A stretch of DNA of 63,704 nt. Source: Glycera tridactyla (taxonomy: Eukaryota). Every line of letters starts with the position of its first letter. The first letter of the stretch is position 1. Under the pieces are notes generated by a model, which saw only the letters and a program-made list of their open reading frames with translations, was not told the DNA's origin and ran no database searches. The position numbers were made by a program, and so were the translations under genes. Of this stretch, positions 32,405 through 48,290 are shown one piece after another. The stretch covers positions 78,368,297 through 78,432,000 of the forward strand of contig OZ286463.1 in NCBI GenBank assembly GCA_965644265.1. The letters are read 5' to 3'.

Positions 32405-34560
32405 AACTCAAATCAAATCAAAATCAAATAAACTTTATTTCTCCTCGTATCGAAAATATACACATGTACAGTTAGCCCAAGATAGTCTTTATCCGGTACA
32501 CACGAGGTAACATATTTACAAGATGGGTTACAAATGTTAAGGTGTTATTTTCAACCTCTTATTGTTAATTCAATGTTAGCTACAGGCGGTTTTATATTTA
32601 CATACCATCATACAATCATCACAAACACACAAAGATGAAATTTCAATAATATATTGATTAGCATCGGTCCTCATCATTTAATTCTTGATCTGTTGTTAGG
32701 GAATCTATGTACAGGAGTACTACCCATTATATGGATAGTATATTAGTTCCCAGGATCAGGGATAGTATTAAATTTTTGCTGAGAGATGTCAACTCCTGTT
32801 GTAGAAAGCAATTTTCAGATGTAGAATTTTTAAGTTCCCATGGGTTCATCCCTCCCTTCATTTTTGATTTGAGAAATTTTATTGAGTTAGCATTCCGAGT
32901 TTTAGGTGATGATGGATTCCAAAGTATAGGTGCACATATTCTAGAATTTCCCTCACATTCACGAAGTCGTGCCTTGGGTACTTGCCTTGTACAGAAGCTC
33001 TTGTTTTTTGCTTGTGGCCCTCCCTTGTGTATTAAAACATTTTCCCAGTTGTACATCTAGTGTGTTTGTTGAGTATTTTATTTAAATGAGTTACAGTATG
33101 TTTGTTGCGTCGTGTTTTCAAAGTGAAGTTGTAAGCTTGTTGTGGTTTTATCCTTTTTCAAAATAGTTTTGGATGTGCTGTAACATTGCAGCATCTTTTT
33201 GGAACAAATGGTCATATATGATGTCGCAATAGTCAAAAACTGGTGCCACTATGGTCTTGTATAATGTACAGGCGGTATTTTGACTAATGATGGGTCTAAG
33301 CCTCCCAAGTAATTTCACTTTTCCTATTGTTTTGTTTTTAATGTAATTTGCGTGGGAGGGGAAATTCAATTCATTATCAAGCATTATGCCAAGGTATTTA
33401 TATTCGGTTGCATTTTTGATCTGTTGGTTATTATATTCTACCCTTATGTTGTTGCATTCTCTTAACATTTTCTTGGTTCCAAATATCATATGACATGTTT
33501 TATCTATGTTTAATTCCAATTTGTGTAGTTTCAGCCAGTCTGCGATAGTTGATAAATTTCGATTTAGGGCAATTTGCATGTCAATGGGGTGCCCGTGTGT
33601 TACTGAGATAGCCGTATCGTTGGCATACAGATTTACTCCCGCATCTCTAAAGATTGTAGGTATATCGTTTATGAAGATTGTAAAGAGTGGGGGCCCCAGG
33701 ATGGAACCCTGGGGCACCCCACACTTTATAGGTGTTGATGATGATACATGGTCATTGCCTTTCGTACAACAGGTTCTATCAGTGAGGTATGATTCCACCC
33801 AATCAACTGCATGTTTATTGAAGCCTATTTGGTCTAATTTTTGACACAACATTTTACGATTCACAGTGTCAAAGGCTTTATGCAGGTCCAGGAAGAGCAC
33901 TCCACTGGGAGATCCCTCCTCCAGACCCTGATAGATTCTATCAAGGAACTGGAGGAGACATGTCGCAGTGGAATAACCTTTCCTGAAACCTACTTGTTTT
34001 TCATTTGAAATGTTGTTAGCCTCTAGGTATATCATTATCTGGTCGTGTATCAGCCTCTCTAGTATCTTGCTGAGTGGATTTAATACCATGATAGGTCGGT
34101 AATTTGAAGGGTTGCTCTGATTTCCATCTTTCAATAAAGGTGTTATGGTGCCACTTTTCCAAAAATGTGGGAGGTCACCTTCATCTCTGCTTTTATTAAA
34201 AATATGTTCAAGAAGAGAAGCAATACTAGGCGTTAACCATTTTATGATTGTAGGTGTGATACCATCATTACCCGGACTTTTTTTGGTTGAAGTTTTACCA
34301 ATTATCTCAATTATATCTTCCGAGGTCATGTGTGCGAATTTAAACTTCCCGTTTCCAGCATTATTATAGGGATTCTGTTCTGAATCGTCCGAGAATTCCT
34401 CATTGATCTTTTGCCCTATTGTACTAAAATGCTGGTTTAAGATTTCAGCCATCTCCTCGTCTTTTGTAGCCCCATTTATCTTATTTATATGCCCTGCCCC
34501 TTTATCGTTTGGCGTGATTTCTCTAACTAATTTCCAATTTTTTTTTACTATTCCCTTTTG
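32405..34560 (-). mobile_element. 5'-truncated non-LTR retrotransposon, L2/CR1 group (ORF2 RT, C-terminus, 3' UTR and tail)
   Basis: The RT ORF at 33148-34452 extends upstream in frame as KGNSKKNWKLVREI. A C-terminal ILWNPSSPKTRNANSIKFLK segment lies in the 32727-33056 ORF. The minus strand ends in AATAAA (32434-32439) followed by an imperfect (TTTGA)n tail (about 32408-32430). Confidence 0.95.
33148..34452 (-). pseudogene. LINE ORF2 reverse transcriptase domain, 434 aa open but probably inactive
   Basis: Motifs: KKSPGNDGI, WKSGTITPLLK, NYRPI, QVGFRKGYST, LFLDLHKAFDTV, GVPQGSILGPPLFTIFINDI, YKYLG. The catalytic YADD reads YAND. There is no endonuclease domain and the frame breaks after LQHIQNY. 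Confidence 0.92.
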
Positions 34561-42794: not shown

Positions 42795-43798
42795 CTCCTC
42801 GTCTGGGTTTTTTATGGGCATCTGACCTTTTCCATGTTCCTCTATGATCTTTTTACTAACTTCAGCAGTTTCCTTCCCCTCTTCTTTCAGTGCTCTCGTT
42901 ACTTCTTACTCGACTTCATAACTAACCTCAACTACTGAGTCTCATGCTAAATCTTCTCGCCTGCCAAGTCTGTATTATTTCGTATTGTGCACTCCTGCCG
43001 GAAAAAATAATACCTGTACTTCCGGTAGGAATATAATTCTTAATGAAAAAAATAAAGAAAAGGCTCCTACTTCTAGAAATTTTTGCCAGCTCATGATCGT
43101 TCTCTGCCCGCCATCAGGTTTGACACTGCTAATGATATGAATGCTCCCTATCTTTATCTGTTCATTTTAAACTGATGTTTCACTGCGCATGATGGGTATA
43201 TGTGGAAGCATTTCGATCTTGTTTTATCGTATTTCAAAGTGTTTTATTGTATGATTGAGTGATTCATGAGTGAAATTCACATGTTTAATGATTGGGTTTT
43301 GTTTCTAACCAATTTGGATGGCTGGTCAATATATGGAACTATCTGGAGCATCCTCTATCTTAGGAAATTGCTAGTTGCAAACTATGCAAGGACTTGGTTT
43401 GATGCAGGCCTATTCACTATTCAGTGTCATGGCTTACCTTCGAAAAGATTCGCGCATCACCCACTGCATGAAATTTGAGGTTACTTGCAAAGTAAACTAA
43501 AAGTAAACCACAAGTATACATGATGTTTAATTAGATTTAATGAAGTTTAATTTCACATTATACATGATGTTTACTTTGAGGTATACTTGGGGTATACTTT
43601 ACAAGTGAAGGACCAAATTTACTTGGGTATAAGTTTACACTTTTACTTCAGTATACCTGATGTATAATTAGTTCAAGGTGTCATTTTACATGTTGTATAC
43701 TTTCACATCTGGATTTTGTTCACCAGTTATATATCATGCTTTCTGCTATATTTCACAGTTGATATTGTGTCTGATGCAGATGAATCAATTTTAATGTA

Positions 43799-44207
43799 TT
43801 GACATAATGTATACTATATCCAGTTTACCCTGTTGACATGGCATCTACTTGCCAGTTTACCCAATTATATGCAGTTGACATCATGTGTACTGCATGCAGT
43901 TTACCCTGTTGACATGACATTTACTGACCAGTTTACTCAATTCTATCCATTTGACATGATGTATACTGCATGCAGTTTACTCTGTTGACATGATATCTAC
44001 TGACCAGTTTACCCAATTCTACACCATTGGCATGATGTATACTGCATGCAGTTTACTCTGTTGACATGACATTTACTGACCAGTTTACCCAGCTCCACAC
44101 CATTGACATAATGTATACTACATGCAGTCTACTCTGTTGACATGACATTTACTTGCCAGTTTTCTTAATTCTACCCCATTGACATGATGTATACTGCATG
44201 TTTACTC
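43799..44207. repeat. 76-bp minisatellite, about 5.4 units (34+42-bp dimer), left subterminal array
   Basis: Units start at 43799, 43875, 43951, 44027, 44103 and 44179. Both subunits begin TTGACAT and contain CAGTTTAC. Confidence 0.93.
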
Positions 44208-44222
44208 GAATAGTCGATACCC

Positions 44223-44225
<3 letters not shown>

Positions 44226-44284
<59 letters not shown>
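44226..44284. repeat. (CA)n microsatellite
   Basis: Perfect run. Confidence 0.98.
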
Positions 44285-44286
<2 letters not shown>

Positions 44287-44677
44287 TTTCCCAGATGGAG
44301 ATTTGCACATGCACATATATACTTGTACCAGTATATCTATCATGTTTGAGTCACTGGGCATCAGAAGACATGGCTTCAAAGATGATACATCAACAATGAG
44401 AAGTTTCTTTCATGGACTTTATTCAACATTTAATGAGTCACTTGGCCTCATTTGGGACATCTTGCTATGCTGCTCTTTTGGAGACTTGTTCTTCATCTAC
44501 CTGCCTCAACTCCTGGTAATGACTATGAGGTGCCATGGTTTTCCTTACACTGCTGTTGCTAGCATCATCACTGCTGTCGCTAGCGTCATCACTTCTCTAT
44601 AGAATCTAATTCCTGAAGAGCACTTTTGTGTCACTGGTCCATTTTTTGTAGTATCAGGTCTGAAACAGAAGAAAATA

Positions 44678-44852
44678 CACTGAAACCTGCTTGAGTGTAA
44701 ACCTGTGCTAGGCAAAATCCTATCTTAAGCACATGCCCCACAGTCTGCCCGGATTTTTTTCTCACTATAATTGTCCTGCGATAAGCAAAATCCTGTCTTA
44801 AGTGGAATTAAAATTTGGTCTTGTGACTTTTCACTTAAGACAGGTTGTACTG
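44678..44852. mobile_element. MITE with TA target duplication (Tc1/mariner-pogo type), 175 bp
   Basis: TA|CACTGAAACCTGCTTGAGTG ... CACTTAAGACAGGTTGTACTG|TA: imperfect TIR of about 20 bp, with TA on both sides. Confidence 0.8.
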
Positions 44853-45496
44853 TATTACAACTTTGTGGAATGAGCTCTTTGCAGTTTGTCAGAATTCAGT
44901 AAGTGAGGCAATTAAGCTACAAGTCAGACAGAGAAGCTGGCAAAGATGCACATGGAAATACACATACACAAACAGTCGTGAATAAATTAATTCAGGACTT
45001 TTTGCCAGGAGGACTGTAGCAATTTCATTTCTCATAGTTTTGTTGGTCTTCATAACTCAAGATCATCCTTTTAAGATTCAGCAATTTACATTCTTCTGTG
45101 TTGCTGTCAACAGCCAATCCTGAAAAATGTGGACTGAACCTATGCAAATGAAACTCTCAAATTACAATTACCAAAAATATTTCATGATCCATGAACGTAC
45201 CCCAAACTATGAATGTGAGTGATTTGCCAACCACTGTCATTCAGACAGACACATGGATTTTTATCATATTGACAGAACCTGACCTGCTGATGAAACCAGG
45301 GGGGAAGTGATTCAGTGTAAATTATGGCTGTTCCTCTCCTCCACAAGTCACACTCATTTTTGTTGAATGAGCTGCATTCCAATAGACCCATATGTTGTAA
45401 AAACCGATACCCCATGTGGAGGAACAACCATAGACACCAGAGGTGTGTGGGATGGGGGTGAGAGGGGGACCTGGGTTTGTTACTGTACCAAGTGAA

Positions 45497-45509
45497 TGTG
45501 TGTGTGTGT

Positions 45510-45553
<44 letters not shown>
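45497..45553. repeat. (TG)n microsatellite
   Basis: Near-perfect run. Confidence 0.98.
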
Positions 45554-45557
<4 letters not shown>

Positions 45558-45608
45558 ACATGCATGCTTGGGACCTAATTCTCACATATTTGTCAGTTTT
45601 AGATGATT

Positions 45609-45786
45609 CAGTGAAACCTGTCTTGGAAGACCCCTCTTTTGGGAGACCACCCTCTAATGGGAGACCACTCTTTATCGGCTCTTCTCTATTTGACATCGTC
45701 AATTATACCTCCAATGAGAGACCACCTGTCTTGAGAGACCACTCTTTGTTGGCATTTGGGATGGTCTCCCAAGACAGGTTTTACTG
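45609..45786. mobile_element. MITE, CAGTGAAACCTGTC type, 178 bp
   Basis: CAGTGAAACCTGTCTTGGAAGACC ... GGTCTCCCAAGACAGGTTTTACTG|TA, with internal GAGACCAC repeats. The left flank is TT rather than TA. Confidence 0.85.
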
Positions 45787-45871
45787 TAGTACATGAATGC
45801 ACAAATTTCTGCATATTTGAGTATAATTCTGTACATCTGGGCAAACATCAATTGTGCCAACCAAATCAGTA

Positions 45872-46036
45872 CAGTGAAACCTGACAGGAAACAAGAAACC
45901 TCCTGTGATGGGGTACCACTTTCTCAGGCCAGCTTTTCAATTTAATGTTTTCAAATATTCTCCTGGTGAGAAACCATCTCTTCTAAGAGGCTACTATTTG
46001 GTACATTTGAGGTTGCCTCTCATCACAGCTTTACTC
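45872..46036. mobile_element. Degraded MITE of the same TA|CAGTGAAACC class
   Basis: TA|CAGTGAAACCTG ... ACAGCTTTACTC|TA. Length and internal layout resemble 45609-45786. Confidence 0.6.
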
Positions 46037-47156
46037 TATGAAGGATAAAACAGACATAATTCTCTGAAATACTCTGAATTGTCTCAAAAATACTGCTCAT
46101 CACTGATAAACTAACAAATGGAGGAAATTATGATCTCCAACTCAAGTTTTTTACCTACCCTGCATCCAGGTCATTTTGAGTTGGTCCTGATACCCATCCA
46201 CATCATGTGTGTATATGGGGTGGGGTTAAGTGGGGTGTATGAATATGAAGTAGGTAGATTGAGACCAGCTGAGATGGATGGGTTGGTGCATGGGGGGTTG
46301 CATACCAGTGGAAATCTGAAAAATTGACTACCTCTGGTTAATTGGGTGTCCTTGACCAGAGCAAAGTGCCGCCCTTGGTGCCCCAACATCCCCCCCCCCA
46401 GCATACTCGCACATACACAAGGTCTTCAATACATAAAGTTTGGAGAGATGAGTCTTTTATTCCTAAGCATACCTCTCTTGCCTGGTATATTCCATATTAC
46501 TGTTGAACCTGCCCTAAGAATGCACAGCACTAAGCAAGAACCATTCTCAAGCAAACATGCTGAATCCATCCCGCCAGGGTATTTTCACTTCAATTTACCT
46601 CTACTAAGCATTCACCTGTCCTGAATATGCACTTGTGTGCCTTCCCTTGACCACATGCTTAGAACAGGTTTGACTGTGTGTTGAGGAGCACGCTATCTTA
46701 GTGAAAATCCGCTGTTTCCCACATATAAGTATACTGGTAGCTATTGGCCCGTCCTGGCTGCCTCGGATAAATCTGCAAATCCAGCCCAACATGACTCACA
46801 ATGATTTATAAGTCATAATTATTACAATAGGCCATGAGGGTAATTTTGAAGGACATTACAGTGAATCTTGTAGAAATACAGTGAAACAGTTCAACAGAAT
46901 TATGTCAGACTCAAAGTCAAACCTGTCTAAAAGTTGCTAGTGACAGTGGTCCGGATTTTCCGAAAAAATTCGGAAATCCGAAAATTGGGTGAAAAATATT
47001 AGTTTTCAAATTTGCTAAAATCTGGTTTTGAGTTTCAGAACGAATACTTTCGATGATATGTGAGGGTAGTCTTATAAAATGTTTCCATATTTCCGAAAAT
47101 TTAGCTTCATCTCATCGGCATCACTGTATGATACACCATATATCTTCAGTAAACAA

Positions 47157-47695
47157 TTGACATTATGTAAAAGTGTATTTAATTGGTGATGTTTACACAA
47201 TTATACATCATGTAATCTGCTTCACTTAAACTCAAATAAGATTGATGTATAATTCACCCTATAGCAAAAGTAAATCATTGACATGATATAAAAGTGTATT
47301 CAATTGGTGATGTTTACACAATTATACATCATGTAAACTGCTCCTCTCGAACCCAAATAAGATTGATGTATGATTTGCCTTATACCTAAAGTAAATCATT
47401 GACATGATGTAAAAGTGTATTTAATTGGTGATGTTTACACAATAATACATCATGTAAACTGCTCCACTCAAACTCAAATAAGATTGATGTATAGTTTGCC
47501 TTATACCCAACGTAAATCATTGACATGATGTGAAAAGAGATATAATTGATGATGTTTACACAATTATACATCATGTAAACTGCCTCACTTAAACTCGGTT
47601 TAGTTTGATGTAAAAGGCTGACTTAAACACCAAGTAAATTTTTGACATGATGTCAAATGTGATTTAAGTGATCAAGTTTACAAAGTAAACATCAT
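47157..47695. repeat. 121-bp minisatellite, about 4.5 units, right subterminal array
   Basis: TTGACAT unit starts at 47157, 47278, 47399, 47520 and 47642. The array runs into the right TIR. Confidence 0.93.
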
Positions 47696-48290
47696 ATTTC
47701 ATGCAGTGACCGTGAAGCATAGGTATATCGACTGTCTCTTAGATTGTTTGAGAAGATCCAGGGACATGGTTTTGTGGGCAAACAATTCGTATCATGAATG
47801 AAATTAAAAAAATCTCTCCTATTCAGAGAGTGCCTTCGATTTTGTTGAGTGCCTTTCTCTGAGAGGTCCTCCACAGGAAGTACGGTACGGATGCAAATAT
47901 CGATCATGTTTATTTTCTCTGCTTCTTCATCATTCTGACATGACGTCGCATTCAGCACATTAATTATGGTGTCATCTGAAAACATCATATTATCCGCGCC
48001 CTGTTTATTGCTCTGAAATTAGATCACATAAAACATGAGCATGAGTTGTATTGGCATCCCCATTCGCCGCTTCGATTGTTCATTCTCTTCCCATCCGGCG
48101 TGGGAGTTGCTCGTGATTGCTCGACTTGATATTATTGGGCCATCAGAAGATCACGAAAATCACTGTGTGGAAGATGTTCATATGCTAGTACGTTAGCTTT
48201 GCGATTTGGGAAATACATTCCAAATAAAACTTTGAGTAGAGACATGTTGAGGACCCTGAGTCTTGAGAGTAACTCCTCGAAGTACCGACC

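What the first reader, a model, noticed from the sequence alone, without database searches (positions are those of the whole stretch)
43459..47711. Complete 4.25-kb CACTA/EnSpm-like insertion with an intact ACC target duplication and no visible transposase
Seen: 13-bp perfect TIRs starting CACTG, ACC on both flanks and repeat arrays inside both ends. Known: CACTR...YAGTG termini, 2-3-bp TSDs and subterminal repeats define the CACTA/EnSpm superfamily. Inferred: this is a non-autonomous element whose interior of about 3 kb is cargo or a decayed accessory gene. That would resemble plant Pack-CACTA elements but in an animal-like genome. It is the best candidate for an undescribed system here.
Basis: partly seen in the sequence, partly recalled or inferred. 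Interest (0 to 1): 0.75.

Follow-up and report, generated by a model that had tools for sequence, protein, structure and literature searches.

The report
Deleted non-coding CACTA-type transposon copy
This is a real but ordinary jumping-gene copy: one internally deleted, protein-less member of a family of several hundred CACTA-type DNA transposons in this invertebrate genome, and it carries no captured host gene.

Summary
The element proper is 43462-47708 (4,247 bp).

It is not chance. The 13-mer occurs 944 times in the 2.04-Gb genome against 14 for a reversed control. All 24 paired copies I could inspect have an exact 3-bp duplication.

The copy is non-autonomous, but its interior is not cargo. 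It is the family's own non-coding body, shared with at least 30 longer copies (median 6.7 kb). Against them the window copy lacks three segments (about 153, 333 and 2,050 bp) and has gained a 175-bp TA-flanked MITE. The missing segments are deletions, not introns.

No ORF, Pfam, Rfam, tRNA or tnp2-transposase remnant is detectable in the window copy or in the family DNA I held.

Some long copies are 99.7% identical over their first 330 bp, so the family moved recently. I could not identify its transposase source.

The scan has already reported other protein-less CACTA-type families in this genome. Verdict: new member of a known kind, low interest.

The parts
43459..43461 (.). Left copy of the 3-bp target-site duplication (ACC)
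   Evidence: Identical to 47709-47711. 24 of 24 family copies have exact 3-bp TSDs.
43462..43474 (+). Left terminal inverted repeat CACTGCATGAAAT
   Evidence: The same 13-mer is found 944 times in the genome against 14 for the control.
43475..44200 (+). Left subterminal region: short 10-11-bp repeats (43489-43599) and a 76-bp tandem array x5.3 (43798-44200) carrying the motif ACATGATGT / TTGACATGA
   Evidence: The 9-mer ACATGATGT occurs 13 times in the element and 0 times in the other 59 kb of the window.
44226..44284 (+). (CA)29 microsatellite, part of the family body
   Evidence: Also present in long copies.
44678..44852 (.). Nested 175-bp MITE specific to this copy, with a TA duplication at 44676-44677 and 44853-44854 and TIRs CACTGAAACCTG.../...CAGGTTGTACTG
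   Evidence: Long copies join 44677 directly to 44853. Contigs of other copies skip it (joint 44675>44853). Contig depth there is very high.
44853..46399 (+). Family body, collinear with the long copies. It includes (TG)30 at 45497-45557 and a second nested MITE-like repeat at about 45608-45786 that is shared by the younger subfamily.
   Evidence: Diverged copies lack query positions 309-487.
46399..46401 (.). Deletion junction 1: about 153 bp of the long form is missing here
   Evidence: No GT..AG boundaries.
46401..46677 (+). Retained 277-bp body segment. Its 3' 180 bp is a dispersed repeat.
46677..46678 (.). Deletion junction 2: about 333 bp of the long form is missing, with 2-bp (GT) microhomology
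46678..46942 (+). Retained 265-bp body segment
46942..46943 (.). Deletion junction 3: about 2,050 bp of the long form is missing
46943..47695 (+). Right arm, including the 121-bp tandem array x4.5 (47148-47695) with the same ACATGATGT / TTGACATGA motifs
47696..47708 (-). Right terminal inverted repeat (ATTTCATGCAGTG on the + strand)
47709..47711 (.). Right copy of the 3-bp target-site duplication (ACC)

Best explanation
Window 43462-47708 is one copy of a multicopy, protein-less DNA transposon family of the CMC (CACTA/EnSpm-Chapaev) kind. Shown: CACTG...CAGTG ends, exact 3-bp target duplications, arrays of a short subterminal motif in both arms, hundreds of copies, and no coding capacity. Inferred from what is established for CACTA/CMC elements: the element is cut out and pasted by a DDE transposase supplied in trans. 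That enzyme would recognise the 13-bp ends plus the repeated ACATGATGT-type subterminal sites and make a 3-bp staggered cut at the target, which after repair gives ACC on both sides. This copy is an internal-deletion derivative of the family's 6.3-6.9-kb non-coding long form. It has lost three segments (about 153, 333 and 2,050 bp) with 0-2 bp of microhomology at the junctions. That pattern is expected from abortive, template-switching gap repair after excision, or from in-situ slippage. It later received a 175-bp TA-flanked MITE. Both ends and both arms are intact, so it should still be mobilisable if the transposase is present. It has no evident host function.
For: Ends and TSD. Family size: 944 TIR 13-mers against 14 for the control, and more than 400 first-look candidates for each terminus. 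TSD: exactly 3 bp in 24 of 24 pairs, 16 different triplets, no consensus. Sizes: median 6,682 bp for the pairs found with terminal queries, plus many 0.9-2.8-kb pairs carrying the same TIR. Collinearity and the three missing segments. The missing segments are also present in the diverged 81-86% subfamily, so they are ancestral. Only the window copy matched across the junctions. The boundaries are not GT..AG or CT..AC. Subterminal motif: 13 copies in the element, 12 of them in the arms, and none in the other 59 kb. No coding or RNA signal. A complete long copy stitched from overlapping loci has no ORF above 120 aa. tblastn with 121 tnp2-type proteins gave nothing in any family locus or in the window. 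Recent activity: some copies are 99.4-99.7% identical over the first 330 bp, while the window copy is at most 97% identical to any other.
Against: No autonomous partner with these ends was found, so trans-mobilisation is inferred, not shown. The only PF02992 (tnp2) hit in the assembly is an intact 968-aa ORF at C26:82102516-82105419. It has no family terminus within 1.5 kb on either side and shares no nucleotide similarity with the family. No empty-site allele or orthologue could be examined. Without a transposase, placement within CMC (EnSpm-like or Chapaev-like) is open. The origin of the three deletions (one repair event or several) cannot be decided.
Confidence: 0.9

Rival explanations
1. 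Pack-CACTA-like gene carrier: the roughly 3-kb interior is captured host DNA or a decayed accessory gene.
For: The interior is long and lacks a transposase. A roughly 180-aa open frame recurs at the same place in about ten copies.
Against: The interior is the shared body of at least 30 family copies. The recurrent frame runs through the (CA)n tract, has no Pfam hit and scores low in the protein atlas, 1162 against 2300 for real proteins. All long genomic matches of the interior lie inside TIR-bounded family copies. The only matches outside them are short nested MITE-like repeats.
Confidence: 0.04
2. The 6.7-kb long form is really autonomous, with a transposase split into many small exons that ORF scanning misses. 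The window copy would then be its decayed derivative.
For: KDZ and other multi-exon transposase genes are reported elsewhere in this genome (earlier scan notes, unchecked). Copies 99.7% identical imply a recently active source.
Against: No ORF above 120 aa in a complete long copy. No tblastn hit at E<=1e-3 with 121 tnp2-type proteins in 79 loci plus the window. PF02992 and the 968-aa protein, searched exon by exon genome-wide, hit none of the family's coordinates.
Confidence: 0.04
3. The termini are a chance inverted repeat, or the element belongs to another superfamily with CAC ends (Transib, PIF/Harbinger, or the TRC type).
For: CAC...GTG ends are shared by several superfamilies.
Against: 944 against 14 occurrences. 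A 3-bp TSD in 24 of 24 pairs excludes the 5-bp TSD of Transib (my own knowledge). The variable TSD sequence excludes the TWA of PIF/Harbinger (my own knowledge) and of Chapaev3 (PMC4079192). The TRC type has CCC ends and 2-bp repeats (PMC1636069).
Confidence: 0.02

Closest known systems
Non-autonomous CACTA/EnSpm elements (plant dSpm/I deletion derivatives; the CMC-EnSpm group)
   Same: CACTG...CAGTG termini, a 13-bp TIR, a 3-bp TSD, arrays of short subterminal motifs in both arms, internal-deletion derivatives, and dependence on a transposase in trans.
   Different: The host is an invertebrate animal. The family's long 'master' form is itself protein-less. No tnp2-type autonomous element with these TIRs was found.
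Chapaev transposons (CMC; Kapitonov & Jurka 2007; PMC4079192)
   Same: Invariable 5'-CAC...GTG-3' ends, a 3-4-bp TSD, and wide distribution in animals.
   Different: The TSD is not TWA as in Chapaev3. The long subterminal arrays and the 6.7-kb size are more EnSpm-like. No transposase is available to place the family.
Animal TRC elements (SmTRC1; PMC1636069)
   Same: Animal members of the CACTA superfamily. A TRC/tnp2-type 968-aa ORF exists in this genome.
   Different: TRC ends start with CCC and have 2-bp flanking repeats. This family has CACTG ends and 3-bp TSDs.
Pack-type (gene-capturing) DNA transposons such as Pack-MULE and Pack-CACTA
   Same: Non-autonomous, with a large interior between transposon ends.
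   Different: No host gene fragments are detectable. The interior is the family's own sequence.

Membership tests
CACTA/EnSpm (CMC superfamily) | Termini 5'-CACTR...YAGTG-3' in short TIRs | tested here: met
   CACTGCATGAAAT / ATTTCATGCAGTG, perfect 13 bp. Conserved in 30 other copies.
CACTA/EnSpm (CMC superfamily) | 3-bp target-site duplication | tested here: met
   ACC/ACC here. 24 of 24 pairs match at exactly 3 bp.
CACTA/EnSpm (CMC superfamily) | Subterminal repeated motifs in both arms | tested here: met
   76-bp and 121-bp arrays. The 9-mer ACATGATGT occurs 13 times in the element and 0 times in the other 59 kb.
CACTA/EnSpm (CMC superfamily) | A cognate CMC/tnp2-type DDE transposase encoded by an autonomous member with the same TIRs | tested here: inconclusive
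   There is one intact PF02992 ORF in the genome (C26), but no family ends lie within 1.5 kb of it. A family left-end fragment lies 22.6 kb upstream in the same orientation.
Chapaev (CMC) | CAC...GTG ends with a 3-4-bp TSD | tested here: met
   Definition from PMC4079192.
Chapaev3 subgroup | TWA target-site duplication | tested here: not met
   16 different triplets among 24 TSDs. Only TTA x4 fits TWA.
Animal TRC type (SmTRC1-like) | CCC-starting TIRs and 2-bp flanking direct repeats | tested here: not met
   The ends are CAC. A 2-bp TSD fits only 3 of 24 pairs. Definition from PMC1636069.
Pack-type gene-capturing transposon | The interior contains fragments of host genes | tested here: not met
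   No Pfam, Rfam or atlas signal. The interior is the family body.
Autonomous DNA transposon | Encodes its own transposase | tested here: not met
   The largest ORF is 134 aa and runs through (CA)n. No tnp2 remnant.

The most novel reading that the evidence does not exclude
A large (6.7-kb), entirely non-coding 'master' form has amplified very recently (copies 99.7% identical), yet no element in the assembly carries its ends together with a transposase. The family may be cross-mobilised by a transposase whose own element has different ends: the single-copy 968-aa tnp2-type ORF on C26, which lies 22.6 kb from a family terminus, or one of the intact 680-710-aa ORF families that are about 27% identical to it. 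Alternatively, its conserved body may provide a cis function that favours its transposition.
Probability: 0.1. Interest if true: 0.35.

Novelty: new member of a known kind. Interest (0 to 1): 0.12.

Why it matters
It matters mainly for annotation. The stretch should be masked as a non-autonomous CMC/CACTA-type transposon with a nested MITE, not treated as a gene-carrying or new system. At family level it adds one more example of large protein-less CACTA-type elements that were recently active in this invertebrate genome. If someone wants to study trans-mobilisation in this animal, it leaves a concrete open question: which transposase moves them.

Tried and rejected
**Intron or 'processed copy' idea**
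- I considered whether the three missing segments were spliced-out introns.
- Rejected: the boundaries are not GT..AG on either strand, and they show only 0-2 bp of microhomology.

**Missing segments as later insertions into the long form**
- Rejected: the diverged 81-86% subfamily also has them.

**Empty-site test by reads**
- Only five small runs held any words of the stretch, and all were contigs.
- They showed other family copies and the nested repeats. No read spanned the insertion site, and there was no secure RNA evidence.

**Paralogous empty site**
- The high-copy repeat in the left flank ends at about 43301. Positions 43302-43458 are single-copy.

**Autonomous partner**
- PF02992 gave one ORF. 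Walking 1.5 kb to each side found no family ends.
- Its degenerate copy on C13 loses homology about 105 bp after the stop codon, with no CAC/GTG end there.
- A very young repeat with 100%-identical ends of about 700 bp abuts the C26 ORF region.
- PF18759 (Plavaka) gave no hit.
- The 681-aa and 710-aa ORFs on C1 have no exact TIR 13-mer anywhere near them in the listed hits.
- L028 and L008, copies that diverge from the family soon after the left end, contain only other repeats and low-complexity ORFs.

- The search of earlier findings by sequence was blank, which means nothing.

**Other**
- The word search with the 968-aa protein found only relatives at 48% identity or less, in bivalves, abalone, lancelets, Lingula and Saccoglossus. 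This genome's own proteins are therefore not in that collection.
Full report
**1. The observation**

Reading the ends and locating the repeat by script gives ...GCGCATC ACC | CACTGCATGAAAT ... ATTTCATGCAGTG | ACC GTGAAGC... The TIRs are perfect over 13 bp (43462-43474 and 47696-47708). They continue imperfectly to about 30-35 bp.

The ACC copies are at 43459-43461 and 47709-47711.

Both arms hold tandem arrays: a 76-bp unit x5.3 at 43798-44200 and a 121-bp unit x4.5 at 47148-47695. The 9-mer ACATGATGT occurs 13 times in the element, 12 of them in the arms. It does not occur in the remaining 59 kb of the window. The largest ORF is 134 aa and runs through a (CA)n tract.

**2. Not chance: a large family**

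The window is C11:78368297-78432000 of a 2.04-Gb, 207-contig assembly. The first and last 300 bp of the element each find more than 400 first-look candidates, and the 40 scored are 83-97% identical.

The exact 13-mer occurs 458 times on one strand and 486 on the other. The reversed control occurs 4 and 10 times.

In the loci returned, I could pair 24 left and right ends. All 24 have identical flanking triplets. A TSD of 2, 4, 5 or 6 bp fits only 0-3 of the 24. The triplets are diverse: 16 different, with TTA x4 and CAA x3 the commonest.

Paired copies found with the terminal queries have a median length of 6,682 bp and range from 2.6 to 14 kb. The window copy is the second shortest. The first 100 listed 13-mer hits also include 16 close pairs of 0.2-2.8 kb, mostly 1.8-2.3 kb. 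Shorter forms with the same TIR are therefore common.

**3. What the interior is**

Against the other copies, the window copy breaks down as follows:
- 43462-44677 is collinear.
- 44678-44852 is an extra 175 bp.
- 44853-46399 is collinear.
- The long copies then carry about 115-170 extra bp.
- 46401-46677 is shared.
- The long copies then carry about 330 extra bp.
- 46676-46942 is shared.
- The long copies then carry about 2.05 kb extra.
- 46943-47708 is the shared right arm.

One long copy, C13:68145585-68151920 (6,336 bp), could be read whole from three overlapping loci of the same contig. It has no ORF above 120 aa.

The boundaries of the three segments missing from the window copy are not GT..AG or CT..AC, and they show only 0-2 bp of microhomology. 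They are not introns.

The three segments are also present in the diverged 81-86% subfamily, for example C4:9086xxxx and C1:1178xxxx. They are therefore ancestral, and the window copy has lost them. Only the window copy itself matched across the junctions among the best-scoring candidates. This deletion derivative has no detected sibling.

The extra 175 bp is a MITE with a TA duplication and TIRs CACTGAAACCTG.../...CAGGTTGTACTG. The long copies show the empty TA site. A second, related repeat at about 45608-45786 is shared by the younger subfamily and absent from the older one. Both repeats have enormous depth in the public contig runs.

**4. No cargo, no gene**

- ARAGORN found no tRNA.
- Rfam found nothing near any gathering score.
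- Pfam found nothing for the ten largest ORFs.
- A roughly 180-aa frame that recurs in about ten copies runs through the (CA)n tract. It has no atlas neighbour and a recognition score typical of non-proteins.
- tblastn with the genome's 968-aa tnp2-type protein and 120 relatives found nothing at E<=1e-3 in the window or in 79 loci.
- All long genomic matches of the interior lie inside TIR-bounded family copies. The only matches elsewhere are the short nested repeats.

The Pack-CACTA or 'decayed accessory gene' reading is therefore not supported.

**5. Activity and age**

Over the first 330 bp, several long copies are 99.4-99.7% identical to each other. The family median is 95.6%. The window copy is at most 97.0% identical to any other copy. 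The family was moving very recently, and the window copy is somewhat older.

**6. The transposase source is unresolved**

PF02992 (tnp2) hits the assembly once: an intact, intronless 968-aa ORF at C26:82102516-82105419. A degenerate copy lies at C13:45803671-45805381. About 15 intact ORFs of 588-1113 aa are only about 27% identical to it.

I found no family terminus and no nucleotide similarity to the family within 1.5 kb of the C26 ORF. The C13 copy loses homology about 105 bp after the stop codon, without a CAC/GTG end. A very young repeat with 100%-identical ends of about 700 bp abuts the C26 region.

A 236-bp family left-end fragment lies at C26:82127989-82128225, 22.6 kb upstream and pointing toward the ORF. 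With about one terminus per 2.2 Mb, I estimate that arrangement would arise by chance roughly 1-2% of the time. It is a lead, but I could not read the DNA between.

The limits were these. The protein's best database relative is only 48% identical, from bivalves, abalone, lancelets, Lingula and Saccoglossus.

On C1, the 681-aa and 710-aa ORFs have no exact TIR 13-mer nearby.

**7. Mechanism**

Shown: the ends, the TSD, the motif arrays, the copy number, the deletions and the nested MITE.

Inferred from established knowledge of CACTA/CMC elements: a DDE transposase supplied in trans binds the TIRs and the subterminal motifs, excises the element, and inserts it with a 3-bp staggered cut. Internal deletions with little microhomology are the usual product of interrupted gap repair after excision.

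**8. Comparison with known kinds**

The features match the CACTA/EnSpm definition and also the broader Chapaev hallmarks of CAC...GTG ends and a 3-4-bp TSD (PMC4079192). They do not match Chapaev3, which has a TWA TSD. They do not match the animal TRC type, which has CCC ends and 2-bp repeats (PMC1636069). From my own knowledge, they also do not match Transib (5-bp TSD) or PIF/Harbinger (TWA TSD).

Without a transposase, placement inside CMC stays open.

Earlier notes of this scan report a 26-kb TRC-type CACTA element (s1-322445) and a family of about 160 copies of 12-kb protein-less CACTA-type elements (s1-318279) elsewhere in this genome. I did not check them. They agree that such families are ordinary here.

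**9. Verdict**

This is a real, well-delimited, non-autonomous CMC/CACTA-type transposon copy. It is a triple-deletion derivative of a protein-less 6.7-kb family form. It is a new member of a known kind and not a gene carrier. Interest is low.

Noticed in passing
window 44678-44852 and about 45608-45786: Two related MITE-like repeats of 175-180 bp with TIRs of the type CAGTGAAACCTGTCTT.../...AAGACAGGTTTTACTG. At least the first has a TA duplication. They have by far the highest contig depth of the stretch in three public runs (13,000-59,000 summed word depth), so they belong to extremely abundant families.
   Followed up: partly
window 44226-44284 and 45497-45557: (CA)29 and (TG)30 microsatellites lie in inverted orientation about 1.2 kb apart inside the family body. 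Both are also present in long copies. They could pair as a long hairpin stem.
   Followed up: no
L067 (G000 C26:82102516-82105419, minus strand): An intact, intronless 968-aa tnp2/TRC-type transposase ORF (PF02992, E=3e-11). It is effectively single-copy in the assembly, with one decayed copy at C13:45803671-45805381. Its best public relatives are at most 48% identical, in Mytilus, oysters, abalone, lancelets and Lingula. It could be an active element or a domesticated gene.
   Followed up: partly
L068:1-697 (G000 C26:82101001-82101697): A roughly 700-bp segment is 100% identical to more than 40 places in the genome. These often lie as same-strand pairs or triplets spaced about 12.7 kb apart, for example C32:88520166, 88532882 and 88545596. 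This is a very young element of about 12.7 kb with long terminal direct repeats, or a tandem unit.
   Followed up: no
G000, about 15 loci such as C42:32302171, C13:91024096, C51:45551617, C26:37228685, C1:2291725, C11:53125087: Several multi-copy families of intact 680-710-aa ORFs are about 27% identical to the catalytic half of the tnp2-type protein. They are likely young CMC-related transposases and candidate mobilisers of protein-less CACTA-type families.
   Followed up: no
window 33151-34452 (minus strand): A 434-aa ORF with a reverse-transcriptase domain (RVT_1, E=2e-33). A retroelement lies about 9 kb upstream of the insertion.
   Followed up: no
window 43081-43301: A high-copy dispersed repeat ends about 160 bp before the insertion site (38 genomic matches to its last 52 bp, high contig depth). 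The insertion itself is in single-copy DNA.
   Followed up: partly
window 46498-46677 and 46995-47126: Two further short stretches inside the family body also occur outside family copies or have raised contig depth. They are probably older nested repeats shared by all family members.
   Followed up: no
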